Positions 32,007 to 52,391 of a stretch of 64,000 nucleotides of DNA are shown piece by piece (positions within the stretch are counted from its first letter, which is position 1; each line of letters starts with the position of its first letter). The stretch is taken from assembly GCF_003704095.1 (NCBI RefSeq), contig NW_020846908.1:248001-312000 (forward strand), in the 5' to 3' direction. The notes under the pieces were generated by a model. The model saw only the letters and a list, made by a program, of their open reading frames with translations, had not been told where the DNA came from and made no database searches. The translations under genes were made by a program, and so were the position numbers. Origin of the DNA: Pocillopora damicornis (lineage: Eukaryota).

Positions 32007-35000
32007 AGAATGTGTAGGTGGTTTGGAAAGGGACACTAAGTAACTGATGTTTGCATTTTTGAAAAGGAGAAAGAGCATTTACCTTCAAACGATTCCAGTG
32101 AAAATATTGTTCAATAATGGCCAAAAAGTATCTATTCATCTGAAGTAAACTCAGACTTGGGTATTTTATGGTCTATTGCCACTGGTGTCTGAATAATTCT
32201 GAACAGAAATGAACTTCATTGTTGCCATGCTTCCTTACAGCTGTTATTGGATCTTGTCAAGCAATGTGCTCTCTTCCCCTATTGTGTGACAAGATCAAAC
32301 AATGGCCTGCTCATAGACTAAGAACATGCTTACTGCCATTCCTTTGTTGGAGAAAAAAATCAAAATTATTTTGTTATAGCTAGTTGCCTCAAAAATGTTC
32401 TCCCAGATAATTTTGCAGTGGAAAGCAATAATTGATTGGTACTGAAAGATCTAAGCACAAGAGAATTGCATGGAGAATTGACTAAAGTAACATTTAGTTC
32501 CATGTGAAATTATTTCAGTGGGGAAGGATTAATTAAAAAATAACTTGAAAATCAGCAAAGAAGGGATTGTCCATAGTTAATGGGCATGTGAATATGTTTA
32601 CAAAAATTGAATTCGTGTGTTGTCTGTTTCAGGTGGAAGTGGTGATGAGCATGGTAATGTCTGCATGTTAGACCTGTAGTTTCAGTTTCTTGTCTGGCAA
32701 TCTGTCAGTAATGTATCACTCTCGATTCAACTTATATTGAATTATAAGCTTAAGCTAGATCAGTCAGGGAGATAAATTAATAGGAATAATTACAAATGCA
32801 TGTTAGTCAATGATCTAACCATTCTGACCTTACAAATCAATTGATTCCACTTGGTTTGTTTGGATGTTATTAATATTATTTTGTTTAATTTTTGTATTTC
32901 ACTGGCAGGTTCCTCTGAGGAGCGTGGCTTTTGTGATTATTTGCTGACATTTTTCTCCTCCTTAATATTTATCTGTACGCTGCCTTTATCACTGTGTTTC
33001 TGTATAAAGGTAATGACCTTCTTAGGTTACTGTTGACAAAATTAACTCAAAATTTTCAAGATATCGCTCTTTAGATAGAGAGAGCAGTTAAGTTTAATTT
33101 TAAAAAAAAATACAAAATCTTGAAAAAAAGGGCAATGCAACTGCAAAAAATATTTTAAGGGAACCATGGTTTCTTTAAAAGTAGCACAGGTTGGAGGATT
33201 TTTGCACAAGGCACCCTATTTTGTTGACAATAATCTTAATATTAATCCAACTCGTGTACTTTTTTGCATTAATTAGCTGTTGTAGGGAACCAATATGGTT
33301 ATTTTTAATCAGTTCACAAAATCATATTACAAAGTCAGGAGAAATTTTAACAGATTTTCTTCTGGTGTAGTTTTCTTTTAAAGGTTTTACTGTCTTAATC
33401 TTTTTTTGAGTTCTGTCAGGGAGTTAATTGTATCATATGTAAACAATTTTTACATTTTCCTTTTCATTACAAATGGAAAGGACAACACATCTATTGCAAA
33501 CTAGCTGTAATTTAAATTGCTCCATTATTGGAGTTATGAGAAATAAAAATGATTCTTTTAAAATTTATTAAAAAGGTTTTTTTTTTTATTTGTTGGCATT
33601 TAATATTCTTGATTTTGTCTTTACTGTCACATAGGTATAAAATTATAAACATCTATTATTTTATGTCAACAAACTTCTTAATCTGACTGAACAATTTTTT
33701 TCCTTTCCTTGTCATTAAGATTGTACAGGAATATGAGAGAGCAGTTATTTTCCGTCTTGGTCGACTTCTTCCTGGGGGAGCAAAAGGACCAGGTGAAAAT
33801 TATGGACCTGTTTATACAATTACGAATTAGATATTATTGTTCACATTGAAAACTGTCATTTTTTCATGGCACTGCAATTGAAATTTTCCAATCATTTGCT
33901 ATGATTTTGAAAATTACCTCCAATGTCAATTAAACCACAAAATGTTAGTGCAGTAAGATAATAGAAGAAACTTCTAAATGAATAAGAATAAATCAATATG
34001 AATTGAAGTTGGTAAGCAATAACTATAGGACTGAGTGGAATCCAATTCGGCTTGTAATCATTAAGTTATTGACAAAATAGGACAACTTCAAAGCGGGAGT
34101 CTGATTTGTCAATCATGGGTATGATTACAGACAGAATTGGACAATGTATAGTCCTGTTACCAATTAATCAAACGTAACCCTAAGCAAAAAACAGTAATTA
34201 ACTTGGAAAATGCATGACAACAGCATGTGCACATAACCCATTCTGTCCACTTACACAGGCATGGCATGTTAACTATCCCTTTAACTGTCCTATTACACTG
34301 TCCAAATACAAGCATGACATGTACACTGTCCTATGCAGTGCTCAAATCAGGCTGTGATAACCAATCACATTCGAAAATTTTGTTATAGTTTTGATTAAGG
34401 ATGACAAAAATTAATTTGGATTCTACTTGACAAATATTAGACCCCTAATTTAACTTCTCTTAATTGATAAAGACACAAGAAATACATTGTGAATAATAAT
34501 GCTTGAAACAAAGCATCTGTAGGTTGTGAGATTGACCCTGGCAAACTGTTAATTTTTTAGGAATGTTCTTTATTCTGCCATGTATTGACTCCTACCAAAA
34601 GGTAGACCTGAGAGTCGTGTCATTTGATGTGCCACCTCAAGAGGTAAAGAACAACATAGTGAAGCAACCTTATTTTCTTGGGGACAGGTAATTTATATAT
34701 TAGTTAAGAATGGTGGATCTGAAAGTGTGGTCTGAACTCCAGGTGACAGTAGATTTGAGGAAGACTTTTGTTGGTTATTTCAAGACAAATAATTCAGTAG
34801 TATGCGTATTTATGTTAACAAAAATTTTGGCAGGTTTTGACCAAAGACAGTGTTACTGTAGCAGTTGATGCAGTGGTATATTTCAGAATATACAATGCAA
34901 CCATGTCCATCACCAATGTGGAAAATGCCAATCGTTCCACACGTCTGCTAGCTCAGACCACCCTGAGAAACGTGCTGGGAACCAAGAACCTCAGTGAGAT

Positions 35001-36217
35001 ATTAGGTGAAAGAGAAAGTATCAGTGAAACAATGCAGGCAAGTATGTCATATGTAACTTCATAGTAAAGCAAAACCATTGCAATTCCATACTATAACCAA
35101 GTCTGAGATGCTTTAGATCAACTCCTACTTTTTATCTCTGATTATGTTAGAAGTTTTCATTGGTTGGATGCATGTATTGTGTGATTAAGTGCATGACTAA
35201 GCAAGTTACAAAGAAGTAAGTAACCTCCCTTAGTATTCTTGATATCACCTTAGGGCTCAACCCTTCCATTTGTGTAGCTGATTTCGAATCAAACATTGCA
35301 TTGTTGTTGTATTTAGATTTGAGGCACATTAGAAAGAAACTGGGAAAAAATTTTTTGTTGTTTTAATTTGTTAATTTGTTTATATTTTGTTGTTAATTTG
35401 GGTGAATGTACTGTTCCACAGACTTCTTTGGATGAAGCCACTGATCCATGGGGTGTCAAGGTTGAGCGAGTGGAAGTGTAAGAACATTCACAATCTTTTT
35501 ATTGCTCTTAATGTTCTAGTTGCTGTTGTCCTTCTATTATCACATTTCTGTGTTGTCTTCACCAGTAATGGTGAAGTTTACAGTGATAATATTGTTAACA
35601 AAGTCTGCTAAACATCAATTTTTTGCATAAATGTCTGTTTTTTGATAACTTGTTAGTAACTGTTAATTGATTTTACAAGATTCTAAAATCTCATATGTCT
35701 CTTGTTGATATTTGTCCACAGGAAAGATGTGCGTCTTCCTCAACAACTGCAGAGAGCCATGGCAGCAGAGGCTGAAGCTTCTCGTGAAGCTCGTGCTAAG
35801 GTACTCAACCAAAGTTCACATTTAACAAAGTTATTGTATTGTTTCTTCTGATCAGTAACTTTGTATTTCTCTTCAACTAGAAAAAGTTACTAGAAGTTAT
35901 TGTATTGTTTCATTACAGTACCAATTTCAAAAAAAACTATTCAGATTTTAGAAATGAAAAAAGAGAGAAGAGAATTCTCCAGAGAAAGCTTTCACAATGA
36001 GTTGTACTTTTCACATCAGGTCATTGCTGCAGAGGGTGAACAGAATGCATCTCGTGCACTGAAGGAAGCTGCTGACATAATTTCAGAGTCGCCTTCTGCT
36101 CTCCAACTCAGATACCTGCAGACACTGACAACCATCTCAGCAGAGAAGAATTCCACTGTTATTTTCCCTCTCCCTGTCAACTTTTTGGCTAGACTTCTTC
36201 CAAATGAGAACAAATGA
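28012..36217 (+). CDS. STOM: Stomatin/band-7 (SPFH) paralogue 1, ~298-305 aa; exons 28012-28114 (or alternative 29985-30027), optional microexon 32633-32653, 32909-33009, 33720-33792, 34561-34643, 34834-35037, 35422-35477, 35722-35800, 36020-36217
   Basis: GFCDY-hydrophobic hairpin-CTLP, [83 protein letters not shown]. One GC-AG intron. The first-exon choice is less certain than the core exons. Confidence 0.92.
31975..32003. repeat. (TG)n microsatellite
   Basis: About 14 TG units read directly. Confidence 0.9.
34020..34398. repeat. Interspersed repeat in a stomatin-1 intron
   Basis: Its 3' end, tgataaccaatcacattcgaaaattttgttatagttttgattaa, matches the arms of the palindromic element at 50248-50371. 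Confidence 0.55.
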
Positions 36218-36268
36218 GTAGATGAAAGAAGGAAGTGTTCATCCTTGACTGAAATTAGTGTTCTGTGA
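36218..36268 (+). other. Putative stop-codon readthrough extension of stomatin-1 (VDERRKCSSLTEISVL*)
   Basis: In frame after TGA 36215-36217; the terminal LTE(I/V)SVL-stop is conserved with stomatin-3. Confidence 0.6.
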
Positions 36269-37834
36269 TTATGAATGTTTGTTTCCAACACAAGATGTAG
36301 ATATAGAAATAAATGGATGACACTGTGTATATAGCAGAAGAATCAACTAAAAATTTATTTATTGTTAGCCTTGCAACTTGTCTTACTATTTAAGGAGATA
36401 TAGATTACGTATGTTAAGGAGCAGTAGCCACATTGTTTTTGATATTCCTTTCTATTAGTAGATATTCTCTAGTGCCATGCTTTGTTGTAAATGCTATAGA
36501 CATATTCACTATGCTAACAGTTAGCTTTGGACAGTCTTTTTCTAGGAATAATAGTAACAACAATAAATAAGTTTTTTGAGCATGCGATTATTTCAACTTA
36601 CCTAGGTTGCTATGCAACTCAAGGCTTTTTCTTGTTTTAGGTTAATTTTCCCCATTACTTTTCCCCATGGACTTATTATTCTAAGTTTTAGTCATAGCAT
36701 CTGCATTTAAAATGGTGATTTGTGGCTAAATTAAAGACTGGAGTTGCATGGGTTTCAAGAGAGAGAAAAATGACAAGCTTTCAGGAGTAACTTGAATTTT
36801 TTATTGAGGTTTATTTTGGTTTGTTAGACTAATCTATAGCTCCATCAACTGAAATTAAGATTAAATTTAAAGTACTCATATCAAAGGTCAAGTTGCTGAA
36901 TAAAGAGCACTCTTCTCACAGATAAGATGCAATGGTTTGTGGTCATGCATTGAAGATGAGTAAGGAACTGGAAGAGGTTCAGTTGTAGACATTTTTCATA
37001 ACAGTGATGCTATACCAGCGTCTTACTAAATTATGGGAAAATGCACTCTTGTTTCATATTAATAAATTTTTGACCAATCAGATGATCACCGGCATCTAGT
37101 AAACCCTCTACTCTTTGGGTGGAAAATAACGTGATAAATAACTAACGCATAACTTTCTTGCTTCATGGCCTCAAAAATCTAAAAGTGATTTCTTTATCGT
37201 GGGTCTTAGCTGTCAAAAGGAAAGAATTTGGACGTATTATTTCCATTCTGCAAAAGTCACACTAAATATGTTACAAGGAAATTTTTTGGCTTAGTTTGAG
37301 AAACCGCACTAGATATTGTCAAACAGAGGACCGGTTCATGGTACTTTTTCTTTTTTCCCTTTTAGTTTTTGATGAATACAGTCTTGCATACTTAATAACC
37401 ACGATAAAATTGATGTGTACCTTTTAATAACCCCTGCAAGGTAATAACTACGAACTAGCTAACAATGGTAAGCGACTGATGATCACGGAACAGAAACATC
37501 ATGATCCGCAGCTAAGTTTTATAGCCATCGCAAACGGGCTTATAACTTTAATTGAGCTGCATTAGGATTTGTGTTTATTTGTGGCTTCGCCGGGCCAGGA
37601 TTATTGTCGGGAACTGATTAGAAACTACCCTTTCCGTTGGCCTGGCGGCAAAGGCAGGTGTGTGACAAAAGACAACTTAGCCTCTCCTGGAAAGGATCCC
37701 AGCACTATACTTCCTTATTAGGTAATGGATAAACCTTGATGCATGCACTCCCTCGATTGCTTGTTGCTCGCCTTCTCCATACTCTCTGAAATATCTGAAA
37801 TCTGGCAAACGCTAAAGAAACTTCAACGGCGCTA

Positions 37835-40800
37835 ATGGCGTCTGAAGGTGAGTCATTAACGGTGTCTAAAGGGATAAACGGGGGTAACTTGCCTGCTTAC
37901 GACCAAGATGTACCTTAAAGGTGCGCGATGGTTATTTCGCTCCCCGCACTCGTTTCTTATTTACCCATCCTCATCGCGGTGATGTTGTGAAAATTATAAC
38001 AAAGAAGTTATGTTTATTAGAGTTTTAGCAAACAATTAACGTTGAATGTAAAAGTGAACGTTAAGTTATTTTTAAAAGCTTCTGTCTAACTTTGCAAGAT
38101 TGTCAAACGGTAAACATGGGTGCTGTATTTATATCGATAAGTCTTGTCGACGTCATTCGATTTTTCTGGTAACAAATTTTCACTTTACGCGTTTTCAGCT
38201 CTGGTGTCGATTCTTTACCTTTAATCATCGAACACTGATTTAATCAGTTACGTGCTTCTGTAAAGATAGCTTTTTAGGATCAACCGATTCAAACTTCTTA
38301 TCTGACTTACCAAGCGATGGAAGCCGAGAAAAATTCTGGGCTAGGAAGCCATTCACTCTCAAAACAATTCATGTTAACGGAACGTTTAACAGAACGTTTA
38401 ACGGGACGTGAGCCTCGAAAAATATATTTTTTTTTATTGATCCATTACAGTTCAAACGTGTGTATTTTCTAATACACACATTTGTAAAGCTCTCAAGTTT
38501 TGTTTCGACTGCAGAGTCACATTTAGGTATGCTCATCGGAACGGTATAGTGGTTGTTTACGAGCTTGCACAGTGCACCCAGATTTCTTAGTTTTACATTC
38601 ATAAATTCCTTACCAAACCTTATTACATCATTTTCTGTCAGAGAAGGTGTCTCGAAAACAGAAATGGTCTTTCTTTGTTAATTTCAGGGAAGATTCATCT
38701 GAATTCCCTACATTAGTCAGTAACTTCCCTGCTTAATTATTTATGAAGTAAAATCACCTTCAGGATGTTTTTCATGTAAAGAGTTCTTTGGTCAATCAAG
38801 GTTGTTGATCAGTTGTTTCAAACTGTAAATTCGTGGAGAACCTAGGCATTACAAAGGTAGTGACGCCATTAGTGAACAGAAGGTGGCCATCATTCACACC
38901 TCTTGCTGAATTAGTAATTCCAGAAAATATCTTAATGGTTTTTAATGAATATTTAGCTTCAGCCATAGTGCCTGAATGTCTGTAAATCAACATAGCGCCC
39001 TAACCATATTCTGTATTCATTAAATTTTTGATGATAATGGTGTGCTACAGTGAAAAGCTAATGAGAACAGTCATTCATTCTGATAATACAACTTCATCTT
39101 TTTTTCTCTTAGTGGGACGAGACCATTAGTGATTAATCAAATTCTGTGGCTTTGTATTATTGGTTATAGTTTAAATTCTTCTTTGCCGAAATACTTTCCT
39201 CCTAATCAGTCTAGCAATAAAAATTTGAACTGCAAGCTTGGTAGGGGTGTTTAGATATTTCAATGCATTAAATGTGAACAAGCTGTCAAATAACAAAAAA
39301 TTAATATAGGTATTGCTTGCATGTCTTTACTTTTTGACTTGACGTAGCTTAAGTTTCCTGTATGAATCTTTTTTTTCAGAGGATTCAGGTGACCGTGGTT
39401 GCTGTGACTATTTACTCACAGGCTTGTCTATCATCCTGTTTGTGTGTACTTTGCCATTATCTTTATTCTTTTGTTTAAAGGTAAGTTCACTAGAGGTAGT
39501 TTTCTATTGTAAGCCCCTTTTTTAAAGATTTTATTTAGATGACAACTTAGTTACAAGTTTCATGAAATGAAAAAGTTGATTAGATTTTTTTTCTTTTGTG
39601 GACACAAAAACAGATTGTACAAGAATATGAGAGAGCAGTGATCTTCCGCCTTGGTCGTCTGCTGCCTGGAGGAGCCAAAGGACCAGGTAAATAACAATTA
39701 ATGGCTGGAACATAGCTTGGTATACAAAACTACTTGTATATGATCTTAACCTTGTATCAGCAAAGTGATACTTTTTGGAAATGTCTTTTCCTTTATCAGT
39801 GGTCTGATTTAGCTATATTCCAAACATTTGGAACCTTTGTATACTTGATAATTTTTTATTTATAATTTTCAGAGCATTTTATAGTAATTTTTTATGGCAT
39901 TATTTTAGGTCTCTTCTTTATTCTGCCTTGTATTGACTCCTATCAGAAAGTTGACCTAAGGACAGTGTCCTTTGATGTTCCACCACAAGAGGTAACCACA
40001 GTTGTGGTAAAGATAGTAAAAGAATCAAGTGCTTATGCAGTCTTCCTTAATAGTAATTTTCTCTACAATCATGACAAAAAAAGTTTATGTTTATATTTGC
40101 CTGGTGGTTTGGTAAATTCTTGTTTACAGCATTTGCAGGAGAGATGATGATTTTTGGAAATGTTCATTGAAACATTTTTGTAAATTTTAGTAAAATGATT
40201 TAGTTGCTGATAGTGATGTAACCTTTGGCTAACAAACCTGAGTGCTTGAGAGAATTAGTGAGGCACAGCTGAAAAAAATTCAGGCTCAAATGATTTTATT
40301 TTGCTTTTGTTTCATGGACATTGTTAAATTGATGTGAAATAAAATCTAAACTTAAGCCTACAAGATGAAAAATGCTGGGTATAATAAGTAAGTTTTGGAT
40401 GAGGTTGAGCATGATTTCATGAGTTATAGATGCCAAGGTGTGAGTTACCTGCCAAAGCTGAAGGCTGAGGCAGATAACACAGACACAAGGTTTGATAATT
40501 CATAATATCATGCAAAAACAAATTCAATAGTTGTTTTGTTATTGTAATAGATTAGGATCCTTCCAGACCCCTTGCATTCAGAGACTGTAAGCACATGCAG
40601 TTGACTTTAACAAGTAGCGAGCACATGATTGGTGTTGTGAGCTCCAGATATTACAATAGCTGGCAAGGAGGATGGCAAGCAGCGTTGCATGACCAAATTT
40701 TTTGTGGGCTAAGAAATTTGTACCAAATATTATATAAATGTTGTTAAACAGTCTGCTAAAGAAGACACTTCTTTCTGAGTTTGCAAAACTTTGAGAGCAC

Positions 40801-42540
40801 TACACAGACGAGGAGCTTGGAAACTAGGCAAATTTTAAACTCGACATTACAACCCATTATCTGGTGTAGATATTGGGTTATCACATTAACTTCACACTCT
40901 ATTGTAGATTGACTGTTTGCTCTTGACCAATTGGAGTTTCATAGGAAGTCTAATGTATAATGATGTCATTTATAATGTGTTCCCTTTGGTTGGATTTTTT
41001 TCTGTAGGACATATGTGGTACTTAGTGTATTTTTTAGCCACTTCCAATCTGATCAGCTGGTTGTGCCTTTGATTTATTATAGATTTTGACAAAAGACAGT
41101 GTTACTGTTGCTGTTGACGCTGTGGTATATTTTAGAATCCATGATGCAACTATGTCCATCACCAATGTGGAAAATTCCAATCGTTCCACACGTCTGCTAG
41201 CTCAGACCACCCTTAGAAATGTGCTGGGAACCAAGAATCTCAGTGAGATATTGGCTGACAGGGAAGTTATTAGTCATGTCATGCAGGTGATAACAGAATC
41301 TGAGTCTGGATCATTGCTGTATGTTTTAATTAAGAATTTTTAAGCTGTAACAGGTTGAGAAATCAATGGCAAGCAAATTGCTGACTTCATTGGAAGATTC
41401 CAATAATTTTTTTTCTGCCAAACCTAAGTTTGACACAATGGTTATATTAGCCATTCTTGAATGCATTTTAAAGGCAAGAATCACCCTTAACAGTCAAACA
41501 AGTTGAAGCTAATATTTTGATACAGGCTGTGTAATGTGTGGAACTATTTGTCTTGTTTACATAAACAGTGGAAATAAGTCATTTGTGATCTTTCATGAAA
41601 TAATGATCAAACCCTTGATAACTCGAGTAACTTAAATGTTGTGCATGAAGGAAAGTTGTGTGGATCATATCTTGTGTTTTCTTTTCATTAGAGCTCACTT
41701 GATGAAGCAACTGATCCTTGGGGTGTTAAAGTGGAACGTGTGGAAGTGTAAGTTAAAGCTTTATCCAGCTTTTTAAATTGGTTCCTAGTTTTAACTTGAA
41801 GCTGTACATGAAAATGCCCCTCCCCCCCTTAAAAAAAAGAAAATAAATGAATAAAAATGACTGACATAACATGTACCTTACAGGAAGGATGTACGTCTTC
41901 CTCAGCAACTACAGAGAGCCATGGCAGCAGAGGCTGAGGCTTCTCGTGAAGCTCGTGCCAAGGTATGAAATTTTTTCATTAGTAAGAAATCTCAGTTTTG
42001 TGGTAGGTCATCAGTGTTACAGTTTATTAGTTATATGTAAGAGCTGCCTTTTTTAAGTTTACATAGGCTCCCTTTGATTACAAAGGAAGCTGATGTGAAG
42101 TAGTCATTCTAGATTTATAGATATGGTTCTAATTTCAAGCTTTTGTATTATAACTCGTAACTTGGATTATAAAATTGAGTGATCTGTATATTCAGGTTAT
42201 TGGTGTTTAGTTAAGAGGTGATACTGAACTTAAATGACTTTGAATATCAGAAATTAAATAAAATAAAAACAAAGATACTTCAATAGATGAAGCTGTAAAA
42301 TTAGAAAAAATATCATTTGGTGAGGTGTTCTTTTCATTTCAGGTTATTGCTGCTGAGGGTGAACAGAATGCATCTCGTGCACTGAAGGAAGCTGCTGACA
42401 TCATCTCAGAGTCTCCTTCTGCTCTTCAGCTGCGATACCTACAGACATTGACAACAATCTCAGCTGAGAAGAATTCCACAATCCTATTTCCTCTCCCTGT
42501 TGATTTCATGAGCAGATTCTTACCAGACAAGAAAGGTTAA
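37835..42540 (+). CDS. STOM: Stomatin paralogue 2, 268 aa; exons 37835-37847, 39380-39480, 39614-39686, 39909-39991, 41083-41286, 41692-41747, 41884-41962, 42343-42540
   Basis: Same exon sizes (101/73/83/204/56/79/198) and SPFH motifs as paralogue 1; first exon MASE; ends TAA TGA. Confidence 0.93.
40378..40960. repeat. Interspersed repeat insertion in stomatin-2 intron 4
   Basis: This intron is much longer than the homologous introns of the other two paralogues; internal hairpin-like segment gtgagttacctgcc...ggcagataacac. Confidence 0.45.
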
Positions 42541-44865
42541 TGAAATCAAGAGAACAAAGAATGAGAAAAAACTTGCATCATTGCAAGATAGTTGATTATT
42601 CAAAATAGATATCAGTGCTTTTTATCATAAAGGAACATTAAGATTCAGAGCTTGAGATTAACAAGAACAAATCATGTAGTAGTGATAATTTCACATTATA
42701 TGGCAGCCAGATTTTTTTAAATTTCTTCTGTTGTACATATTTGTGAAAGAAACAATTCTTTATCAGTATAACAGAAATGCAAATGGAGCCAAAAAAAAAA
42801 AAAAACATGTTTCCAGTTGATCATGATTGATGCAGTGCCTTTTATGGTAAGCCAGCTACTTCTCTTGTGTACTTGCAAACTGGGCAAAGCCTGTGACAAC
42901 CCCATCATAGGACAGACTGGACTGTGGATTCTTTTACTGATGAAACAGAAATAAAATGATAGATGCTTTCAAAGATATTTCATTTATTTAGTTTATTCCT
43001 TCCACATGATTGCAGTTTTAGTGTCTATGAGCTCTATTCAAATCTAGTTTAGTGGGATGAAAAGTGCAGATCCCCACCAAAAATTAAGTGACCATGATAG
43101 CCATTCTAACTTGTTAATTAGTAGTGCTTGCCAACATCTGAGCAATTTAGGAGTTAGTCTTGAGCTCTGAATGCATATTTCAGTTTATATGAGTAATATT
43201 TCTGCATTAGACATAAGCTTATTTACTCAGGGTTAACAATGTATGTTGAATAAATGTACTTCTCAACTTTTTCTTTAGAAATGTGTAATGGTCAAAAATT
43301 GATTGATGTTGGAACATCTCGATAACAGACATGCTAGAAACAGTCCTATGGCAAGGGTCATGCAATATACAATTATAGCATTTTTATCTAATCAATTCTG
43401 ATGGGCTTACAGTTCCTATTGATTTAGTAAATAGAAAATATTATGAAATGTAATCATTAGGATAATTCTGATCAGAGGACTCTAAGAGTCTGTACTAGTT
43501 TGTTTTCAAGTAGAAAAAAGTTGTGTTACTTTCTTTTTTTAAAGTTAATGTTATGTGGTTATGTTGTTAGCATTGAGAATATGTAACATGTTAAAAGTGG
43601 TGAGCTGTAATTTTTTGGGGGGGCTGGTTCATAGACTGGCCTAAACATCTATTGTAGACATGCTGTGTTGCATAATAGCATAATAAACATATAAAGAATC
43701 ATGCCATGTTATGGTTGTCCCAATTCATTTTCACCAGGAAGTTCAATCTCTTCTCCTTGGTTTAAGTACAATGCTGTTAATTGCTTGTGTTATCCTACAA
43801 TGTGGAGACAATCAATGAAGCCAAGAATTGACTCTTTATTAAAAAAGATATCATTATTTACACTCCAAGTTGCAGCTAGCAGTCTTCAAACAGACAGTGT
43901 GAATACATAGTTTGTTCTTTATTTCTGCCTTGCACAAACCTATTGTGGTCTAGTTTGAGTCTCAAGAAAGAAATCAGTTGACAAATGCCAAAGTCCAATA
44001 GAAATTTGATCCAGGCCTTTGTTCCACACATGTACAACAGAGTCTCATAGCTGTTAATCCTTAATATGATTTACATCATTCCTCTTTCAAGATTCAGATT
44101 AATTTGAGTAAAAGGGAAAATTCCTATTCTGTTTAAATGATATTTTACTTATTCTGTTTAAATTTTTGCCAGACCAAAACATGAATAAGGGAAAAAAACT
44201 TGTGGATCCATTAAAAAGTAGCAAATTTTGAACTGAAAACTGTTTGAAGTATGACAAGATAATAGTATTGATGTAAGGGTTCTGTGTTCAACTCATGATT
44301 TAATGAGGAAATTCTTCTTAATGAATTACAGCCTAAAATTAGGGGGGAAAAATGCAGAGGCACTTGTAAAACTGTACATTACCTATAATTTTGTTTGGGC
44401 AAAAGAACACATTTGGGTTGGTTGTATGATGATAACAAAATAAGAAACCCTACTTTTAATTAAAATGAAATTGATGGATTAATTTTGGCGTGTGGGTATG
44501 TTGAGTTACTGTGTTAAAATTTTAATTTATGTATTTGTGTTTAGGTCGTGCAGTTCGCTTAGTGTCACCTGCGCACGTTTTACTGGGGGTAAAAGTGAAA
44601 GATGTTTTTCAGGATTACCAACTGAGATTTCCTCATCAAAGAAACAAAAATAGCTTTGTAACTTTTGTATTGCCAAAATTATAAATATTTTAGATATATC
44701 CATGACAACTAAAAAATAGAGAAATTGATATTTTGACACCTTTGGATATGATTGGTTGTCCCTCGGGAGGAGTATATATCACGTGATGTAGCTGGGTTGA
44801 AGTCTGAGTTGTTTGCAATCGCAGCTTGCCTTGTATTGCCTTCTACGACTACAAATTCCCTGAAA

Positions 44866-47800
44866 ATGGCCTCGGAAGGTAAGAATTAAAATCCTCTTTA
44901 AGGTTAAAAGAAATGAGAAAATTAAATTTCATGTCAGTGGAATTTCAGCGCCAATTTTTAGACTTCATGGGGGGAAAAAAATGGATTAAGATCGTTAAAG
45001 CGACCCGAAAATTCCGTTTTTAGCTAACTCTGAGGCAAAAGTTAATCGTTTCTTCAACATATACCATTTAAGTTTTTTGTTGCACAAAGTTCTGGGATTA
45101 TCTGCTCGAATCATCATGTCGTTTCAAGAAAATTTGATCAAATCTTACGTTGAAAAACCATCTCACTTCAACATAACAGAACACCAGAAGTGAATGATGC
45201 TGCTGTTACTTGCAAATTAATTAACATTACCCGATCCTAACTCGCTCGATGATTTATGTGCGGTCAAACATGCGTTTCTTGAAATATCACCTCATTTCCT
45301 TCCCTGCGTTTGTGCCGAAAATGGTTAAAAGAGGAACCATCATTACTGTGGGGTCGTTAAGTGCTAAACATGGATCATGTAGGAAATTGCTGCAACAAAT
45401 GAAATCTGCAGAATCGTTTAATTATGGTGCGCATTAAATACGTTGCTTCAACATGAGCATGTTAGGTTTGTATATGACAGTAGTTGTGAAACTGAAGATG
45501 GTGGTGATGATATCAGACGCGGTGCAAATGAAGTTTTCAAATCGCTTGAACTTTTATAATAGTTTGAATAGTTTTCTCTGACCTCATCCATCTAAAGTGG
45601 CTTCAGGTTGCATAATATTTGGGTTCATTCGTTTGTGTACATTGTGTTGTTATGAAAATCAAAGCTACAAGCCATCTTCCACAGATAGTTTGTACTGTTA
45701 TTAGGTAAGAACCTTCCTTGGCAAGATAAAAAATATATTCAGAGTAGCTGTGTACGTGTAGTATATCATTGTATTGTTTAGGATTGATGAATATTTTAAC
45801 AATTTAACAATTGTATCTTTTGCAATTGTAATGGAGTGTTTATTAGTAAAGTCACTTCCATTGTTGACTATGACCTTTCCACTGAGTTGCCTCTATTCCT
45901 ATGCAAGCAATGGTATCTACTGGTCAAGTGTTTCATTATGAAGTCTGTTCTGCTGTGTAGTTGTTTTACAGCCTTGTGTAGGGCATTTTCCTTATATGAT
46001 CTCTTAGTGGTTTGCTGTTGTATTTTGTCTTGAATTTGTCAATTTCAATTTTTTTTAATTCATTTGTTATGTATCCTGGAAAAATTAAAATCAGAGCTGG
46101 TGAACTGGTAAATGTTTTTGTTGATTGTTTTTTTTTTGCTTGGTTTTTTTTATAGATGATGATGTTTCAAGAGGGTTTTGTGACTATGTTCTGACAGTTT
46201 TGTCTTTCCTTATCTTTATTTGTACTCTGCCTTTCTCATTGTGTTTTACTTTGAAGGTAAGCAAATTGGTGAATGTAGATCATGAGTGCTCTGGTATGTG
46301 CCTCTTGAACTTAGCCTTATATGTTTTCATCATACTTGATATAAATGTAATTAAGACAACTTTCAGTGAGAAATATGCATAAACTTATGATAATAAGGGA
46401 TGGTTTTGTATACAGATTGTGCAGGAATATGAGAGAGCAGTTATGTTCCGTCTTGGTCGATTACTTCCTGGAGGAGCTAAAGGGCCAGGTATAATGCAAC
46501 ACTAAAACAAGAATAACTTGAATTAAAAAGCTTTGCCTTAGAGGAATAGGAAGTAAATCTTAGACCATAATATATGTAATAATAGAAAATTGGTATCATA
46601 TCTGATTAGAGTTTTTATAGATCCTTATCTTGTTCTTGATTGATGGTGGAACAATACTGGTACTGAATTAAAATGAATATGAATATGAACATGAAAGCCG
46701 GTAGTGTGGGCTTTATATTCTCTACTACCTAGGAAGTGATCATTACTGTGAAGATTGCTTTCATATTCATTACATAATCAGCAGTTCACATGCATGATTT
46801 TGGTTTATTCACAGTTATTAATATCGGTACAGTTTTAAAGTAATAGGTTGTATATGGAAGCTAACCATAAGAAATGAATAGTGATTGTCACTTGCAACTA
46901 TTCTGATTTGGGTTGGCATGAATGATCAGACCACATCATCAATTCCAGTTTTAAATAAACAATAGACTTTGTTTTGTGTATCATATATTGTTATATCCTC
47001 TGATCATTTCTTACTATTATTTTTGTGCAGGGTTATTCTTTATTCTGCCCTGTATTGACTCTTATCAGAAGGTGGATTTGAGGACAGTGTCATTTGATGT
47101 CCCACCTCAGGAGGTATTGACAGTTCTATCTAGGTTGTATGATTTGTTGTTTGAAGAAAGGGTTTCTAGTGTGAGTGCTGTTAGTTTTGATAATAACCAA
47201 GTATCAACATTGGCTTTCAGATTCTGACCAAAGACAGTGTGACCGTTGCAGTGGATGCAGTTGTTTACTTCCGCATCAGTGACCCAACCATGTCAGTCAC
47301 TAATGTGGAAAAGGCTGATCAGTCAACTCGTCTGCTTGCACAGACAACACTGCGAAATTTCCTTGGCACCAAAAATCTCAGTGAAATTTTGGCAGACCGT
47401 GAAGAGATCAGCCATGCTATGCAGGTACAGACATAATTTTGGAATCATTAATTTATGTCTCTTGGAAATAAGTGGACTGGGATTTATTTGTTTGTTACAC
47501 TTTGTAGACTTCTCTTGATAGTGCCACAGATCCTTGGGGTGTAAAAGTGGAACGTGTTGAAGTGTAAGTACTTTAATTTGTAATTCTTGCACTCTAAAAT
47601 TTCCGAGCATAGAGCTTTGAGTGCGTAGTATAGATTGTTATCTTGAAGAATACTGAATCACCATCCAAGTGGGAAGAAAAAGCGCTACTCTCCATCTGGG
47701 AGCTATGAGAGTCAATTTTGTGTACAGATTTAAAACAGGGGATATACTTCTTATTACATGTGAACTGGTTAGTCTTTCTGAAAGAACTTTCTGTCTGCTA

Positions 47801-48537
47801 TTAGTGATGATGTAATAGAAGATTCGGAAATAAATTATTAATATAAAAAAAAAATATATATATTTTTTTTTTTACATGAAACTATGACTCTTTGAAGCCA
47901 TCTTGATTTCTCTTTGTTCACAGTTTTGATTAAGTGTGGAAAAGTATCAATGCATGTTTTACATGAGTTTGGTGAATTTGACTGAGTGTGAAGTCTGGGT
48001 CTTTGGTTATGCAAATTACCTCCTGTAATTCTTGAGAACAGAAATTATTTTTGCTAGCAACTTTCATCAGAACATCCTTAGTAGCAATATGTACTCATTT
48101 AACCTTGTAGGAAAGATGTGCGTCTTCCTCAACAGCTGCAGAGAGCCATGGCAGCAGAGGCTGAAGCTACTCGTGATGCTCGTGCAAAGGTAGATATCAG
48201 CTAACTTGTCGAGGACGGTGCCAAATTCTGAAAGGCTTGTTTCAGTATGATATGTCAATCAAACAATGAGATTATATTTTAAAAGAAAGAAAAGGCTTTT
48301 ACCAAGGAAATTATATTATTGACCATTGTTTGATTTCAGGTCATTGCTGCTGAAGGTGAACAAAATGCATCTCGTGCACTGAAGGAAGCTGCTGACATCA
48401 TTTCAGAGTCACCCTCTGCTCTTCAGCTGCGATACCTGCAGACATTGACATCCATCTCAGCTGAGAAGAATTCCACTATTATTTTCCCACTCCCCGTTGA
48501 CTTTCTGAGCAGATTTTTGCCAGATGAAAAGAAATGA
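44866..48537 (+). CDS. STOM: Stomatin paralogue 3, 268 aa; exons 44866-44878, 46156-46256, 46416-46488, 47031-47113, 47221-47424, 47508-47563, 48111-48189, 48340-48537
   Basis: Identical exon architecture and SPFH motifs; first exon MASE; stop context TGA CTAG. Confidence 0.93.
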
Positions 48538-48609
48538 CTAGGCAGCCAAAAACAAGAAATTGGAGAACGCTCTTCTGAATCACCATTGACTGAAGTTAGT
48601 GTTCTGTAA
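48538..48609 (+). other. Putative stop-codon readthrough extension of stomatin-3 (LGSQKQEIGERSSESPLTEVSVL*)
   Basis: UGA-CUAG context, 23 open codons, conserved LTEVSVL-TAA terminus. Confidence 0.7.
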
Positions 48610-50247
48610 ACAAAACTTGTTCTGTGAACATTTCGAAAATAGTTTACACAGTGTTGTATATAATCCTGCTTTACCTCAGCAAGCAGTTATTTATAATTTT
48701 GATCAATATATGGGAATCTTAAGATTATTTTAACTCAATATATCAGCCAATATCAATCTTGTCAACTACATTTTCCTTGTTGAAAAATATATTGTAATGA
48801 TGACAAAATTGATTAAAAAAAACTGATTGAAAAGCAATCTGAATTAAAACATATACCCTGCTGTGAGTATAAGATAGTAGAATAAATGGGAAATTCCAAT
48901 AGTGCATGGGGTGTAGTCAATTAGGAATCACAAATTAGAAGTGTTCAGATCTCTTTCCTATTGAGTGCTGTTGAACCAAATTAAAGTTATAGCCTCAGGG
49001 GATCAGAGCAGAGATAACCTTCCCAATGAACCAACGAGGACTCAAAGTCTGTACACTAACAGAAAATACCAAGCAGATACATCAAGAGTGCTCTTGTGTC
49101 AGTCACTTTGCCACATATATTTTAGTTTAGCTCTTGGTTTGTCATTAAGATGGTTACCAATCACAGACTAAACCTACCCGATCCTAGATTACTTTCAACA
49201 CTCAGAAAAAAATTTGTACTGACCCTGTTGGGACTTAAAAAAATTTTTTTAGCATTTTGCACATTACTAATCAGTGGTCTGTTTTTTTTTTTTTTTACCA
49301 ACATTTGTTTTTTATTATGCTAGTTTTGCAATAGAAGCGTTTTTTTTCCTTTCATGTTCATAGTTGTCATGTTACTGTATGATGTGATAGGACTGTTAGA
49401 CAAGTATTATTATATGCAGCTGTCATGAAGACAGTATGGAAAACTGATCATTCTGTCTGAAGTCTGCTCATATGTCTGACAAAACTTAAATGCTGTTTAC
49501 TATTTAAGAACATCAAAATATAACATTCACATAAACCAACCATGTGTAGATTAAAGATAAGATTTATATTCAATTGAGAATCATTGACTGTTTAGCATCA
49601 ATACTTGGAGCATCAGAGCTTTCCTAGGAAAATTTTTTATATAATTTACTTCTTATGAATAGAAGTTGCATGTACTGACAATTCTCAAGGGTGAAAGTAT
49701 AAAGCTGCTTGCTGACATTTTTTTTTTAAAATACTTGCTAATTTGTGCCAATTTTGTATCATTTTGCAAATTGGGATGTCCCTTGTTCTAAACTGTCCAA
49801 ATACAGTAGCGTTAGATATAAAATATTGTTGAACCAGTAATTGATGTTAAATGTCAACAATTGAAGTAAAAATTAAAGCTAACATATGGTTAAATGATGA
49901 GTCTTAAATTTTTTTCGATGTGGCATCAAGACTTTTCTGTATGAGGTATAGCTGATCTGATAAAGTGGACAGAATTCTTTCACTTGAAGTGAGTATGTTT
50001 TGGGGAACAGTGATGGTGCATTGATGACTGTGCTTGCCTTCAAGCCTAGTGGTCTGGGTTCCATTCTTAAACCTAGGTTAACAATGTGCTGAGTATCTTA
50101 AAGATTCTTGTATCTGTAGAAAGGGTTCTCCCTGGATTCCTCACTTTCCTTCAGCCAACAAAATGACTTCATCTCCCAACTTTACCTAATAACAATGGGC
50201 TGGCAGACCGACCTTGTGGACGTCTACTGCTTATTCTGATTTATACA

Positions 50248-50371
50248 TTAATCAAAACTATGACGAAATTCTCGAACGTGGTTGGTTATCACCTGCCCGA
50301 TTTGTTATGGTTATGGGACCATTATAAATCGGATTGGTGATAGCCAATCACGCTCGAGAATTTTGTTATAA
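50248..50371. repeat. Short palindromic MITE-like repeat
   Basis: Inverted arms tatgacgaaattctcgaacgtggttggttatcacc / ggtgatagccaatcacgctcgagaattttgttata. Confidence 0.65.
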
Positions 50372-51329
50372 ATAGAATAAGAGAGACGGTGAGTTTTGAG
50401 CTCAGGGAGAGAAGCTTATCCATTTTATGTCAGTCGTGACTAACGTTATATACCTATGTAGCATGAATTTAGGTTTCATTCGTGTCTTATGACTATCGGG
50501 TTTCGTCGTAAGTGATCAAGAATTGCACTTAGGGTTCCTTTCACCACAATCTGAGATGGGTTAGCAAAACTTGTTTCACTCTTTCAAGACACCACTGAAA
50601 AATGATAAAGCGGAAACTAATATGAGTGGGATTGTAAAAGAAGGATGCGGACGGCGGAAAATAAAAATGAACGAGAGAAAATGATTAAAACATTGAAAAT
50701 GTCATCACTGTTAGTAGAAACGAGGCTATCACTGAAAATAATGACCCGAAAATGTGTTAGCTATTATGTATTTCAGCTGTTATTTTACACAATTCAGAAA
50801 GACGAAAGAGAAAACTGTGGATACTGAATACCTAGCTATCACCAGGACATACTCTAGCTTGAACTAAGGATATCCCCACCACCCACGAGTTTATGATCTC
50901 TTGTGCCACCTTAGAAGCACCACCTAATTTTCACATGCAATTTTAAAACATGCACACCAAGTTAGTTTACTCGTGTATATGCTTGAGAATTAGATAAGAG
51001 ATAAATGGGCGAGTGAACGGTGAATGAAACACTACTTTTCGAACGTTTTGCGACGAGCTTCTAGAAGCGATTATAAGATGTTTCGACTGTTGGTGATGTC
51101 AATTTTTATGCTTTATCTATTAATTTCATACTATTGGGATAAAAAAAGGACAACATAAAACACCTTAGGGAGACATTAGATTCTTCAATGTAGTCGCTGA
51201 ATTATTGAGTGAATGAACTGGCCAAACTAAGTTGTTTGCACCTTCGAAAGTGAGCCCGCGTATCTACCTCCCCAACAGGGGCTATTTTTGTCTTCCATAA
51301 TATGACTCTAGAAGTAACCAAAAAGTATC

Positions 51330-51915
51330 ACCTATCTGTTCACTATAAATGTATCAGTCAACTCCCACAATAACAATATATGTATTTCAATGAATACCGA
51401 TAAAGGACAGATCAAAGCAGTAGACATTGTCACTGGGGATATTTCAGATGATCTTAAAAAGCAAATGAGAGCGAAAGTCCCAGATGACCCAACTAAAACT
51501 ATGAGCTTAATATACTCACTTGTCCAAAGAGAAACAACAGCAAAATGTGATTTAACAACCAATATTGATGTCACTGATGGTTTGACAAGTGGTGCAGAAT
51601 GTATTATAGAAAGCATAGGGAACTCTAGCAGACCAAGTATTACATGGGTGTCTTTTTCTGATCCAAGCATTGGCAGCCAAGAAAACTGCCATCTTTATCA
51701 CAGGGAGAATATGAAAAAAAAACTGGACACCAATTTTGGAGGTCACTAGACAATTCAGGATTAACAAGGAAAGTCAAGTGAAAATTATCAAGACCAGCTG
51801 GTGCAAAAACTATTCATCGTTTTCAAGGTGACTCTTAAGATGCAGCAGTTGTTGATTTCCCATCTTTAACAAGATATCATATGCACTATGTTAGCTTAAA
51901 TTGGGTTCAAAACAG
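51330..51915 (+). pseudogene. Decayed PIF1-family (Helitron/Helentron-type) helicase fragment
   Basis: TTNIDVTDGLTSGA, then after frameshifts GAKTIHRFQGDS*DAAVVDF...HMHYVSLNWV, which corresponds to PIF1 motifs V and VI (TIHKSQG; YVALSR), with an in-frame stop. Confidence 0.8.
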
Positions 51916-52391
51916 TTTGGTGCTCAAGGCAGCTCTTTGCATGCCTTTAGATAATAAATTTTAACCTTCATTTTTCTCTTAAATTGTAGGTTAAATGTTG
52001 AACTATACATGGGCATGTCTAAAAACATTCAATGGATCATGAAATTGTCCAGGTTCTGGTGGGTTCCTGTTCAACTGTTGTACTATGATGTCACAATTCC
52101 AGGCTACATCCCACACCATCAGTCTTGACAAAAACTGTTACCTTACCAAGGCTACTGAAACATTACAAGCAAGGAAAATTCAAGTTCAACCCATATTACC
52201 ATGAAGAGAGTCCAATTACATGCCTAAACATATGAACAATTGCATGATAACAGATTCACTGACAAGGTTGTAAAAATCCACACTAGCAACCTCACTGCTC
52301 AAATGTGATAAAACCAGCCCCTTGCTCTTCCCAGACAAAAGAGTATAGGCAGCAGATAGACCATGTCATTACTTTGAGACACCATTATTGT

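What the first reader, a model, noticed from the sequence alone, without database searches (positions are those of the whole stretch)
36215..36268. Stomatin-1 keeps the same hidden C-terminal extension but with a UGA-GUAG context
Seen: TGA GTA GAT GAA AGA AGG AAG TGT TCA TCC TTG ACT GAA ATT AGT GTT CTG TGA = *VDERRKCSSLTEISVL*. The context differs from UGA-CUAG only at the first base after the stop. The extension also has a basic RRKxS kinase-type site just upstream of the PDZ-type end. Inference: readthrough is tuned to a lower level here, or is decaying.
Basis: partly seen in the sequence, partly recalled or inferred. Interest (0 to 1): 0.75.

Follow-up and report, generated by a model that had tools for sequence, protein, structure and literature searches.

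The report
Coral stomatin hidden tail, weakened stop
A coral membrane-protein gene keeps a short, evolutionarily conserved protein tail hidden behind its stop signal, but in this copy the base that normally makes that stop leaky has changed, so the tail is probably now made rarely or not at all.

Summary
TGA at 36215 is followed by GTAG and a 16-codon open frame, VDERRKCSSLTEISVL, that ends at TGA 36266. The open frame alone means little: 35% of stop triplets in the window are followed by 16 or more open codons.

What counts is homology. The gene is the first of three tandem stomatin (Band_7) genes in a stony-coral genome.
- **Tail-bearing copies:** copy C of this window and five contigs from other corals all have TGA-CTAG. 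Each is followed by an in-frame tail ending (S)P(L/M/V)TEV(S/T)VL.
- **Frame:** the tail is in frame with the stop in 7 of 7 sequences, at three different lengths. Stop counts inside the tails are 0, 16 and 20 in frames 0, +1 and +2.
- **Conservation:** similarity falls to background right after the second stop.
- **Control:** the paralogue with a TAA stop (copy B, 4 sequences) has only frame-broken remnants.

So this is an ancient UGA-CUAG readthrough tail. Copy A alone has G at +4, and it reads the same in contigs of four runs from four studies. RNA contigs show no splice across it, and I found no SECIS.

Human and fungal reporter data predict that G at +4 sharply lowers readthrough. Whether the copy is tuned down or starting to decay cannot be decided here.

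The scan noted the same phenomenon earlier on the neighbouring gene of this window (s1-784358).

The parts
34834..35037 (+). Internal coding exon of stomatin copy A carrying the SPFH/Band_7 signature
   Evidence: Pfam PF01145 Band_7, E=3.8e-11, 43.8 bits against a cut-off of 23.6. The exon is conserved in copies B and C.
35722..35800 (+). Penultimate coding exon ([26 protein letters not shown]), ending on a complete codon
   Evidence: Translation. Spliced joints 35477^35722 and 35798^36018 (the cut fits 2 places further right equally well), both GT..AG, are seen in RNA contigs.
36020..36214 (+). Last coding exon of stomatin copy A (65 codons, ...[17 protein letters not shown])
   Evidence: Database relatives are named stomatin-like, Band 7 or mechanosensory protein 2 by their sources.
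36215..36217 (+). First stop codon, UGA, preceded by AAC AAA
   Evidence: The stop is TGA in 7 of 7 tail-bearing DNA sequences.
36218..36221 (+). GTAG context. The 6 other tail-bearing DNA sequences all have CTAG here, so the G at 36218 is derived.
   Evidence: No other letter at this place in contigs of 4 of 4 runs.
36218..36265 (+). 16-codon in-frame extension VDERRKCSSLTEISVL
   Evidence: It has 0 stops in frame 0, 2 in frame +1 and 3 in frame +2.
36239..36265 (+). Conserved 9-codon tail block SSLTEISVL (consensus SPLTEVSVL), ending in a class-I PDZ-ligand-like S-V-L-COOH
   Evidence: 78-89% nucleotide identity to the other 6 tails, against 52-60% for the 60 nt after the second stop. Unrelated 60-mers give a mean of 54%.
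36266..36268 (+). Second stop codon (TGA). Conservation ends here.
36269..37074 (+). Rest of the 3' UTR as covered by RNA contigs (ends at 36894, 36907 and 37074 in three runs). No SECIS and no significant structure found.
   Evidence: contigs; Rfam; own SECIS-like scan, 0 hits; fold z=+0.60.
42538..42543 (+). Copy B ends TAA TGA. Its downstream DNA holds only a frame-shifted, stop-ridden remnant of the tail, which serves as a natural negative control.
48535..48609 (+). Copy C: TGA-CTAG, a 23-codon extension ...ESPLTEVSVL, and TAA. It is the paralogous tail.

Best explanation
Position 36215 is the end of the first of three tandem stomatin genes of a stony coral.

Ancestrally, before the corals sampled here diverged, this gene ended in UGA-CUAG. 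A fraction of ribosomes decoded the UGA with a near-cognate tRNA and added a 16-23-residue tail: a variable, charged linker followed by a conserved S-P-L-T-E-V-S-V-L-COOH end, which looks like a class-I PDZ ligand.

In the lineage of this genome the C right after the stop became G, and this state is shared by all samples examined. The other readthrough-friendly features remain: the UGA itself, the A-rich AAC AAA in front of it, and UAG-AU at +5 to +9. The tail frame and its S-V-L end are intact.

My reading is that the extended isoform of this copy is still made, but at a much lower rate than from copy C, under relaxed constraint.

Shown: the sequence, the homology, the coding-type conservation across corals, the fixed G, and the unspliced mRNA.
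Inferred: that translation passes the stop at all, that G lowers it, and that the tail binds PDZ domains.
For: 1. Tails elsewhere. Copy C and 5 metagenome contigs of other corals (L005-L008, L012) all have TGA-CTAG followed by an open frame of 20-23 codons ending ...SP(L/M/V)(T/P)EV(S/T)V(L/P).
2. Frame. The tail block is in frame with the first stop in 7 of 7 sequences, at three different distances (30, 42 and 51 nt). In the TAA-ending paralogue B the remnant sits at mod-3 offsets 1, 2, 1 and 0.
3. Stops. Inside the 7 extensions there are 0 stops in frame 0, 16 in frame +1 and 20 in frame +2.
4. Substitution pattern. Changes are coding-like: CCT/CCC/CCA, GTT/GTG, CTG/CTT, ACT/ACA, L/M/V, V/I, S/T. 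pN is below pS in 19 of the 20 pairs that differ.
5. Where conservation ends. Tail-block identity is 0.74-0.93, but the 60 nt after the second stop give 0.50-0.62, which is the same as unrelated sequence.
6. Database proteins. Gene calls that read the stop as W show the same tail in further species: P0017, P0049 and P0126.
7. Stop position. 11 of 11 A-type database ORFs end at the same lysine.
8. The G. It reads the same in contigs of 4 of 4 runs. RNA contigs of 3 studies run unbroken through stop, tail and second stop.
9. Motif in this genome. The coral's MDH1, a known ancient readthrough gene, also ends TGA-CTAG plus 7 codons (Stiebler 2014).
10. Role of +4 C..
Against: - There is no direct evidence of translation past the stop: no Ribo-seq or peptide data, and contigs cannot show it.
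- In human reporters no variant lacking CU after UGA kept measurable readthrough. Copy A may therefore be at background level, which is the relic reading.
- A-type tails are less well kept than C-type tails. L005 ends S-V-P. Copy A has P>S and V>I and is 4-7 codons shorter.
- Only 3 A-type orthologues have DNA available, and none is close enough to date the C>G change.
- The polymorphism data have no power. About 0.8 variants are expected in the 51 nt and 0 are seen (my arithmetic on the tables).
- Paralogue coding sequences within a genome are more alike than tail-type orthologues. Gene conversion therefore blurs orthology.
- For P0017, P0049 and P0126 the codon behind the W is unknown.
Confidence: 0.5

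Rival explanations
1. Freshly disabled relic. The C>G change abolished programmed readthrough of copy A, perhaps tolerated because copy C still supplies the extended isoform. The tail is now neutral DNA that has not yet had time to break, the first step on the path that copy B has completed.
For: - CU after UGA is needed for any retained readthrough in three human genes, and C at +4 is 'especially important'.
- Loss of the tail is a common fate in this family. Copy B ends in TAA in 4 of 4 sequences and its remnants are frame-broken in 3 of 4. Copy D reads TGA AAC TAA.
- Copy A carries the shortest extension and has lost the conserved proline.
- Only 8 of 144 single substitutions would create a stop, so an intact frame is weak evidence of selection.
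Against: - The frame is open, its length differs from the orthologues by whole codons, and the L-T-E-x-S-x-L end is kept.
- Its 2 amino-acid changes in the 9-codon block equal those of the CTAG-bearing L005 and L006 (hand count on the sequences).
- UGA, the A-rich upstream codons and +5 to +9 are unchanged.
Confidence: 0.33
2. The UGA encodes selenocysteine. The tail would then be a normal part of a selenoprotein stomatin, directed by a SECIS element in the 3' UTR.
For: - UGA, never another stop, stands in 7 of 7 tail-bearing sequences.
- One SECIS-like hairpin (ATGA...AA...TGA) lies about 890 nt downstream of copy C at 49425-49461, against 0.045 expected per shuffle. An earlier scan note (s1-784358) raised this idea.
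Against: - Rfam scans at E up to 10 find no SECIS in 33000-52000, in 36150-37150, or in 5 orthologue loci.
- My own scan finds 0 hits in copy A's 3' UTR and 0 in 5 of 5 orthologue loci.
- The site lies in a variable linker without a redox motif, and no homologue with Cys at that position was seen.
- The conserved CTAG is the signature of near-cognate readthrough, not of Sec insertion.
Confidence: 0.03
3. The tail is joined to the protein, or the stop is removed, at the RNA level. This could be alternative splicing that skips the UGA, or A-to-I editing of UGA to UGG.
For: - Contigs drop rare variants, so a minor isoform cannot be excluded (note).
- The C>G change creates a GT right after the stop.
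- By recall, corals are reported to edit RNA widely.
Against: - RNA contigs of 3 of 3 RNA runs cross 36049 to 36894 or beyond without a joint. The only joints seen are the two annotated-type introns.
- No A>G is listed at 36217.
- A donor after the UGA would not remove the stop.
- In-frame AG sites inside the extension follow purine-rich stretches rather than pyrimidine tracts, and are not conserved in place (my reading of the and 17 sequences).
- There is no significant RNA structure around or after the stop (z=+0.60).
- By recall, a G 5' of the target A is disfavoured by ADAR.
Confidence: 0.05
4. Not coding at all. The conserved 24-27 nt would be a 3' UTR regulatory element (a protein or miRNA binding site) that merely happens to be in frame.
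For: The block is short, and the remnant in copy B is also fairly well kept at the DNA level between distant corals.
Against: - The block is in frame in 7 of 7 sequences at three spacings.
- Stops are 0, 16 and 20 in frames 0, +1 and +2.
- The changes are third-position and conservative amino-acid changes.
- Conservation stops exactly at the second stop codon.
- It is coupled with UGA-CUAG: the copies with TAA have lost the frame.
Confidence: 0.05

Closest known systems
Vertebrate UGA-CUAG programmed readthrough genes (AQP4, OPRL1, OPRK1, MAPK10; Loughran et al. 2014, PMC4132726)
   Same: - A UGA stop with CUAG right behind it in the orthologues and in copy C.
- A short extension of 16-23 codons, against 13-29 in those genes.
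- Conservation concentrated at the C-terminal end of the extension, as described for AQP4 and OPRK1/OPRL1.
- PDZ-class motifs have been predicted in several of those extensions (Pancsa 2016, table seen).
   Different: - Copy A itself has GUAG, a variant that lost readthrough in human reporters.
- The host gene is a stomatin and the organism a cnidarian.
- No reporter or profiling data exist.
MDH1x / LDHBx readthrough at UGA-CU(A) (Stiebler et al. 2014, PMC4207609)
   Same: - The same short motif, shown there to work in a fungus and in human cells and traced back to Hydra.
- The MDH1 gene of this same coral genome ends TGA-CTAG plus 7 codons, LAAPSQL. The motif is therefore in place in a known readthrough gene of this organism.
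   Different: Those tails carry a peroxisomal PTS1. The stomatin tail ends S-V-L, which by recall of the consensus [SAC]-[KRH]-[LM] is not a PTS1.
Alphavirus opal readthrough (UGA CUA GAC in O'nyong-nyong virus; Sindbis UGA C)
   Same: The nine-base context UGA CUA GAC of the C-type coral tails is identical to that listed for ONNV in the table of PMC13517186. By the title of Li and Rice 1993, seen in that paper's reference list, the single C after UGA is the key signal.
   Different: One is a viral polyprotein, the other a cellular membrane protein. Some alphaviruses add a downstream stem-loop, and none was found here.
Stomatin / SPFH (Band_7) family
   Same: One exon matches Pfam Band_7. The last exon is 74-92% identical to proteins that their sources name stomatin-like, band 7 or mechanosensory protein 2.
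   Different: Two full-text searches found no paper on a readthrough tail for a stomatin.

Membership tests
UGA-CUAG programmed stop-codon readthrough | The stop codon is UGA and is conserved as UGA | tested here: met
   TGA in 7 of 7 tail-bearing DNA sequences. The paralogue without a usable tail has TAA in 4 of 4.
UGA-CUAG programmed stop-codon readthrough | CUAG immediately 3' of the stop | tested here: not met
   Copy A has GTAG and reads the same in 4 of 4 runs. The feature is met in the 6 other tail-bearing sequences. Copy A is thus a derived member of a readthrough gene lineage, not a carrier of the motif.
UGA-CUAG programmed stop-codon readthrough | Protein-coding conservation between the first and second stop, ending at the second stop | tested here: met
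   Frame kept in 7 of 7. Stops are 0, 16 and 20 by frame. pN is below pS in 19 of the 20 pairs that differ. Identity drops to background after the second stop.
UGA-CUAG programmed stop-codon readthrough | Measured readthrough (reporter, ribosome footprints or peptide) | not testable with these tools
   All runs laid were contigs. No Ribo-seq or proteome data were at hand.
Eukaryotic selenoprotein | SECIS element in the 3' UTR | tested here: not met
   No SECIS family hit at E up to 10. My own pattern scan gives 0 hits for copy A and for 5 of 5 orthologue loci.
Eukaryotic selenoprotein | Homologues with Cys in place of Sec | tested here: not met
   None among the 82 database proteins read. 11 of 11 A-type ORFs simply end at the lysine.
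Stomatin / SPFH (Band_7, PF01145) | Match to the Band_7 profile above Pfam's cut-off | tested here: met
   Exon 34834-35037: 43.8 bits against a cut-off of 23.6, E=3.8e-11. The two other exon peptides tried (28 and 65 aa) gave no family.
Class-I PDZ-binding C-terminus | [S/T]-x-hydrophobic at the free C-terminus | tested here: met
   Copy A ends S-V-L. 8 of 9 distinct tails end [ST]-x-L, and L005 ends S-V-P. The consensus is recalled.
Class-I PDZ-binding C-terminus | Binding to a PDZ domain | not testable with these tools
   This needs a peptide-binding assay.

The most novel reading that the evidence does not exclude
Copy A is not decaying but has switched to a CUAG-independent way of passing its stop. 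That could be a UGA-G context decoded by a particular near-cognate tRNA, or a trans-acting factor in certain coral cell types. The two neighbouring stomatin genes would then deliver the same PDZ-type tail under different translational control. This would be a natural example of readthrough 'tuning' by paralogue divergence in an early-branching animal.
Probability: 0.12. Interest if true: 0.7.

Novelty: new member of a known kind. Interest (0 to 1): 0.5.

Why it matters
Programmed readthrough at UGA-CUAG is well documented in vertebrates, fungi and viruses. Outside MDH1, few cellular cases reach back to cnidarians.

Here a membrane-scaffold gene family in stony corals shows the full evolutionary signature of such a tail. 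The states come side by side: an intact signal (copy C), a signal with the key base changed (copy A), and lost signals (copy B here, copy D further along the contig). That is a ready-made natural series for asking two questions: how much the base after the stop matters outside mammals, and how fast a hidden tail decays once its stop tightens.

If the tail is a PDZ ligand, readthrough would set the share of stomatin that is tied to scaffold proteins.

For annotation, the call made on contig L008 shows that a gene caller has already read one of these UGA codons as Trp (P0013), and four further database proteins carry W at the same place.

Tried and rejected
- **Chance ORF.** Rejected as sufficient evidence either way. 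35% of stop triplets are followed by 16 or more open codons, so the argument rests on homology alone.
- **Selenocysteine.** Three Rfam scans and my own pattern scan gave nothing for copy A or for the orthologues. The single SECIS-like hairpin lies near copy C only.
- **Stimulatory RNA structure after the stop.** Folds of 126 nt gave z=+0.60 for copy A and -0.80 for copy C. None found.
- **Splicing or editing.** No joint and no A>G in the RNA contigs. Contigs cannot exclude rare forms.
- **Other copies of the tail in the genome.** A pattern search found only A and C exactly. Two 3-mismatch hits stand against 3 in the reversed-pattern control.
- **Population signal of selection.** 10 variant sites and 2 indel places lie in 36269-37074 and none in the tail. 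Only about 0.8 were expected, so there is no power.
- **Dating the C>G change.** No contig from a close relative was available.
- **Region search with P0010.** It returned only the 3 tail-bearing proteins already known.
- **Profile search.** Of the 150 listed I read 16, chosen because the match reached far into the profile or had several stretches. One new tail turned up (P0126).
- **Metagenome loci.** Of the 80 loci I translated 36 (L005-L040). The other 44, at 47-68% identity, were not read.
- **Literature.**
  - Searches 'stomatin + readthrough', 'stop codon readthrough + PDZ + C-terminal extension' and 'readthrough/coral/stop codon/cnidaria' found no paper on a stomatin readthrough. Listings and abstract starts were seen.
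  - Li and Rice 1993 is not held.
  - Supplements are closed, so I could not check whether fly or mosquito readthrough lists include a stomatin homologue.
Full report
**The observation**

The window reads AAC AAA TGA GTA GAT GAA AGA AGG AAG TGT TCA TCC TTG ACT GAA ATT AGT GTT CTG TGA. The first TGA is at 36215-36217 and the second at 36266-36268. The stretch is in frame with a 65-codon exon (36020-36214) that ends ...[17 protein letters not shown].

A 16-codon open frame behind a stop is not remarkable in this AT-rich DNA. 35% of the 3,858 stop triplets on the + strand are followed by at least 16 open codons. Everything depends on whether the frame is homologous to something that is kept as coding.

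**The gene and its copies**

The window is a eukaryotic locus with short GT..AG introns. Three tandem copies of the same gene end at 36215 (A), 42538 (B) and 48535 (C). A fourth, more divergent copy (D) lies about 19.5 kb beyond the window's end on the same contig.

- One internal exon of copy A (34834-35037) matches Pfam Band_7/SPFH at E=3.8e-11.
- The last exon is 74-92% identical to database proteins that their sources name stomatin-like, band 7 protein or mechanosensory protein 2. One close hit is named for the stony coral Desmophyllum pertusum.
- Run labels include 'coral metagenome'.

I searched exon by exon and made no joined model.

The four copies end differently:

| Copy | Stop and context | What follows |
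|---|---|---|
| A | TGA-GTAG | 16 codons, ...CSSLTEISVL |
| B | TAA TGA | no open frame |
| C | TGA-CTAG | 23 codons, ...ESPLTEVSVL |
| D | TGA AAC TAA | no open frame |

**Relatives in other corals**

A scan of metagenome contigs with the last-exon peptide gave 80 loci. I translated 36 of them, L005-L040. The other 44 are 47-68% identical and I did not read them.

Eight of the 36 are close coral relatives and fall into the same three types by their C-termini.

| Type | Locus | Stop and context | Extension |
|---|---|---|---|
| A | L005 | TGA CTA GAT | 23 codons, ...ESPLPEVSVP |
| A | L006 | TGA CTA GAT | 20 codons, ...SPVTEVTVL |
| A | L007 | TGA CTA GAT | 20 codons, ...ESPLTEVSVL |
| C | L008, L012 | TGA CTA GAC | 23 codons, ...ESPMTEVSVL |
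| B | L009, L010, L011 | TAA | no conserved end |

The 6 other tail-bearing DNA sequences all have C at +4. Copy A of this genome is the only one with G, so the G is derived.

Third-codon-position identity in the last exon between copy A and these contigs is only 0.60-0.70. The comparison therefore spans deep coral divergence.

**Is the tail kept as coding?**

Four independent signs say yes.

- **Frame.** The conserved block ([ATG]TG-ACN-GAA-RTT-AST-GT) starts 30, 42 or 51 nt after the first stop. That is a multiple of three in 7 of 7 sequences despite three different lengths.
- **Stops.** Inside the seven extensions there are 0 stops in frame 0, 16 in frame +1 and 20 in frame +2. The sequences are related and L008 equals L012 here, so these are not independent counts.
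- **Substitution pattern.** The differences are of the coding kind: CCT/CCC/CCA, GTT/GTG, CTG/CTT, ACT/ACA, and L/M/V, V/I, S/T exchanges. In the 9-codon block pN is below pS in 19 of the 20 pairs that differ. Examples are L007-copy C at 0.00 against 0.27, and copy C-L008 at 0.05 against 0.28.
- **Where conservation ends.** It ends at the second stop. The last 27 nt are 74-93% identical in deep pairs, while the next 60 nt are 50-62% identical. Unrelated 60-mers of the same DNA give a mean of 54% and a maximum of 67%.

**A natural negative control**

Copy B has TAA in 4 of 4 sequences. Its downstream DNA still aligns with the tail block (TCATCATTGCAAGAT... against TCACCATTGACTGAAGTT...). Its offset from the stop is 43, 32, 31 and 39 nt, which is mod 3 = 1, 2, 1, 0. 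L009 and L010 differ by a one-base indel, and the window's copy B has three in-frame stops.

Where the stop became tight, the frame was lost. Where UGA-CUAG stayed, the frame was kept. This coupling is what a readthrough tail predicts and what a UTR element does not.

**Further tails in protein databases**

Some public gene calls read the TGA as W and so expose the tail.

| Protein | Tail | Note |
|---|---|---|
| P0010 | identical to copy C's (...ESPLTEVSVL) | one residue differs in the exon part |
| P0013 | ...ESPMTEVSVL | lies on the contig of L008, where the DNA is TGA |
| P0017 | ...SESPPLTEVSVL | codon behind W unknown |
| P0049 | ...KLVEVSIL | followed by a second W |
| P0126 | ...STSLTEDSYL | found by the profile search; a more divergent stomatin |

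For P0017, P0049 and P0126 I cannot tell whether the W is TGA or TGG.

Eleven of 11 A-type database ORFs end at the same lysine. Counting distinct tails, 8 of 9 end [ST]-x-L.

**Rivals tested**

- **Selenocysteine.** No SECIS family match at E up to 10 in 33000-52000, in 36150-37150 or in five orthologue loci. My own ATGA...AA...GA hairpin scan gave 0 hits for copy A and for 5 of 5 orthologue loci. It gave one hit about 890 nt behind copy C, at 49425-49461. It is not conserved and does not concern copy A.
- **RNA structure.** None is significant.
- **Splicing or editing.**
  - In three RNA runs of three studies, contigs cross 36049 to 36894, 36907 and 37074 without a joint.
  - The two upstream introns are seen as spliced joints, so the contigs are real mRNA.
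  - No A>G is listed at the stop. Contigs can hide rare forms.
- **Other genomic copies of the tail.** There are none.

**The G at +4**

Contigs of 4 of 4 runs laid cover the site and show no other letter anywhere in 36215-36268. The runs are X5, X15, X17 and X19, from four studies, one of them under a different organism label.

All 10 variant sites and both indel places in the last-exon and 3' UTR contigs lie at 36281 or beyond. With about 12 variants in 806 nt, only about 0.8 would be expected in the 51 nt. Their absence therefore proves nothing about selection.

**What the G should do**

- Loughran et al. 2014 (abstract, passages and section 15 read) report that the four efficient mammalian readthrough genes all have UGA-CUAG. 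UGA-CUA alone gives 1.5%, and the C right after the stop is 'especially important'.
- Toledano, Supek and Lehner 2026 (preprint; passages and section 7 read) randomised the four bases in three human genes. 764 of 765 variants lowered readthrough, and every variant that kept readthrough had CU at the first two positions.
- Stiebler et al. 2014 (passages read) found the same dependence on the stop and the two following bases in Ustilago and in HeLa cells. They traced the MDH1 case back to Hydra.

As a check within this genome, I located the cytoplasmic MDH1 gene. The PDB match to cytoplasmic malate dehydrogenase has E=4e-21. It ends GAA TGA CTA GCA GCA CCA TCT CAG TTA TGA, so the classical motif sits in a classical readthrough gene of this coral. 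I later saw that the scan had noted this before (s1-782865).

By inference, the C>G change should cut readthrough of copy A strongly.

**Tuned down or decaying?**

For continued use:
- The frame is open.
- Its length differs from the orthologues by whole codons.
- L-T-E-x-S-x-L and the S-V-L end are intact.
- UGA, the A-rich preceding codons and +5 to +9 are unchanged.
- By my hand count on the sequences, its two amino-acid changes in the block (P>S, V>I) are no more than in L005 and L006, which still have CTAG.

For decay:
- The key base is gone.
- The extension is the shortest.
- The otherwise conserved proline is lost.
- Copy C in the same genome has no amino-acid change in the block.
- Loss has already happened in copies B and D.
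- Only 8 of 144 single substitutions would create a stop, so an intact frame is weak evidence.

I put reduced but persisting readthrough at about 0.5 and a fresh relic at about 0.33.

- RRKCS is in the sequence, but none of the 6 other tail-bearing DNA sequences has a basic-basic-x-S site at that place. I give it no weight.
- The PDZ reading fits the consensus, which I recall rather than tested. PDZ-class motifs are predicted in several known readthrough extensions (table in Pancsa et al. 2016). It remains untested.

**Novelty**

Full-text searches for stomatin with readthrough, and for readthrough in corals or cnidarians, found no report of this case (listings and abstract starts seen). Supplementary lists of fly and mosquito candidates could not be opened.

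The mechanism is a known kind. The gene family, the phylum and the side-by-side series of intact, weakened and lost signals are new. The scan had already described the phenomenon on copy C of this same window (s1-784358). This report adds three things:
- the derived state of copy A;
- the copy-B control;
- the run data on the +4 base.

Noticed in passing
window 49425-49461: A SECIS-like hairpin (ATGA...AA...TGAA, 9 of 10 helix pairs) lies about 890 nt downstream of copy C's stop. My scan expects 0.045 per shuffle. Rfam reports no SECIS there, and the C-type orthologues L008 and L012 have none.
   Followed up: partly
L090:1471-1494 (-), i.e. G000 contig C1129, just 3' of the MDH1 last exon: The cytoplasmic malate dehydrogenase gene of this genome ends TGA CTA GCA GCA CCA TCT CAG TTA TGA (*LAAPSQL*). 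This is the known MDH1 readthrough arrangement with a weak PTS1-like end. The scan had noted it already (s1-782865).
   Followed up: yes
database proteins P0010, P0013, P0017, P0049, P0126: These public gene calls carry W where the stomatin stop lies. For P0013 the DNA (L008) is TGA, so that gene was called with TGA read as Trp. Other stomatin fragments also show W followed by junk (P0043, P0085, P0113).
   Followed up: partly
window 36020-36178, 42346-42504, 48340-48498 against L005-L012: Last-exon coding sequences of paralogues within one genome are more alike than tail-type orthologues between genomes. Examples: L007-L011 0.94 and A-C 0.89, against A-L007 0.87. This suggests gene conversion among the tandem copies that stops short of the C-terminal codons and tails.
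   Followed up: partly
L004:1501-1700 (G000 contig C3543, 331547-331735): A fourth stomatin paralogue lies about 19.5 kb beyond the window's end. It is 67% identical in the last exon and ends TGA AAC TAA without a tail.
   Followed up: partly
L005:453-527: This A-type orthologue keeps TGA-CTAG and an open 23-codon frame, but its tail ends S-V-P instead of S-V-L. That would not fit a PDZ ligand.
   Followed up: no
window 50271-50360 and 34343-34398: A long hairpin with a weak plant-miRNA-like Rfam hit (E=0.17) at 50271-50360. It overlaps a 57-nt stretch (50248-50304) that recurs in reverse orientation in an intron of copy A (86% identity). It is probably a small inverted-repeat transposon.
   Followed up: no
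L007:4095-4183: A hairpin about 900 nt downstream of the A-type stop in another coral has several miRNA-precursor-like Rfam hits (best E=3.7e-6, all below the gathering scores).
   Followed up: no
window 36308-36313: An AATAAA lies 40 nt after the second stop. The RNA contigs nevertheless run on to 36894-37074, so it is not the main poly(A) signal.
   Followed up: partly
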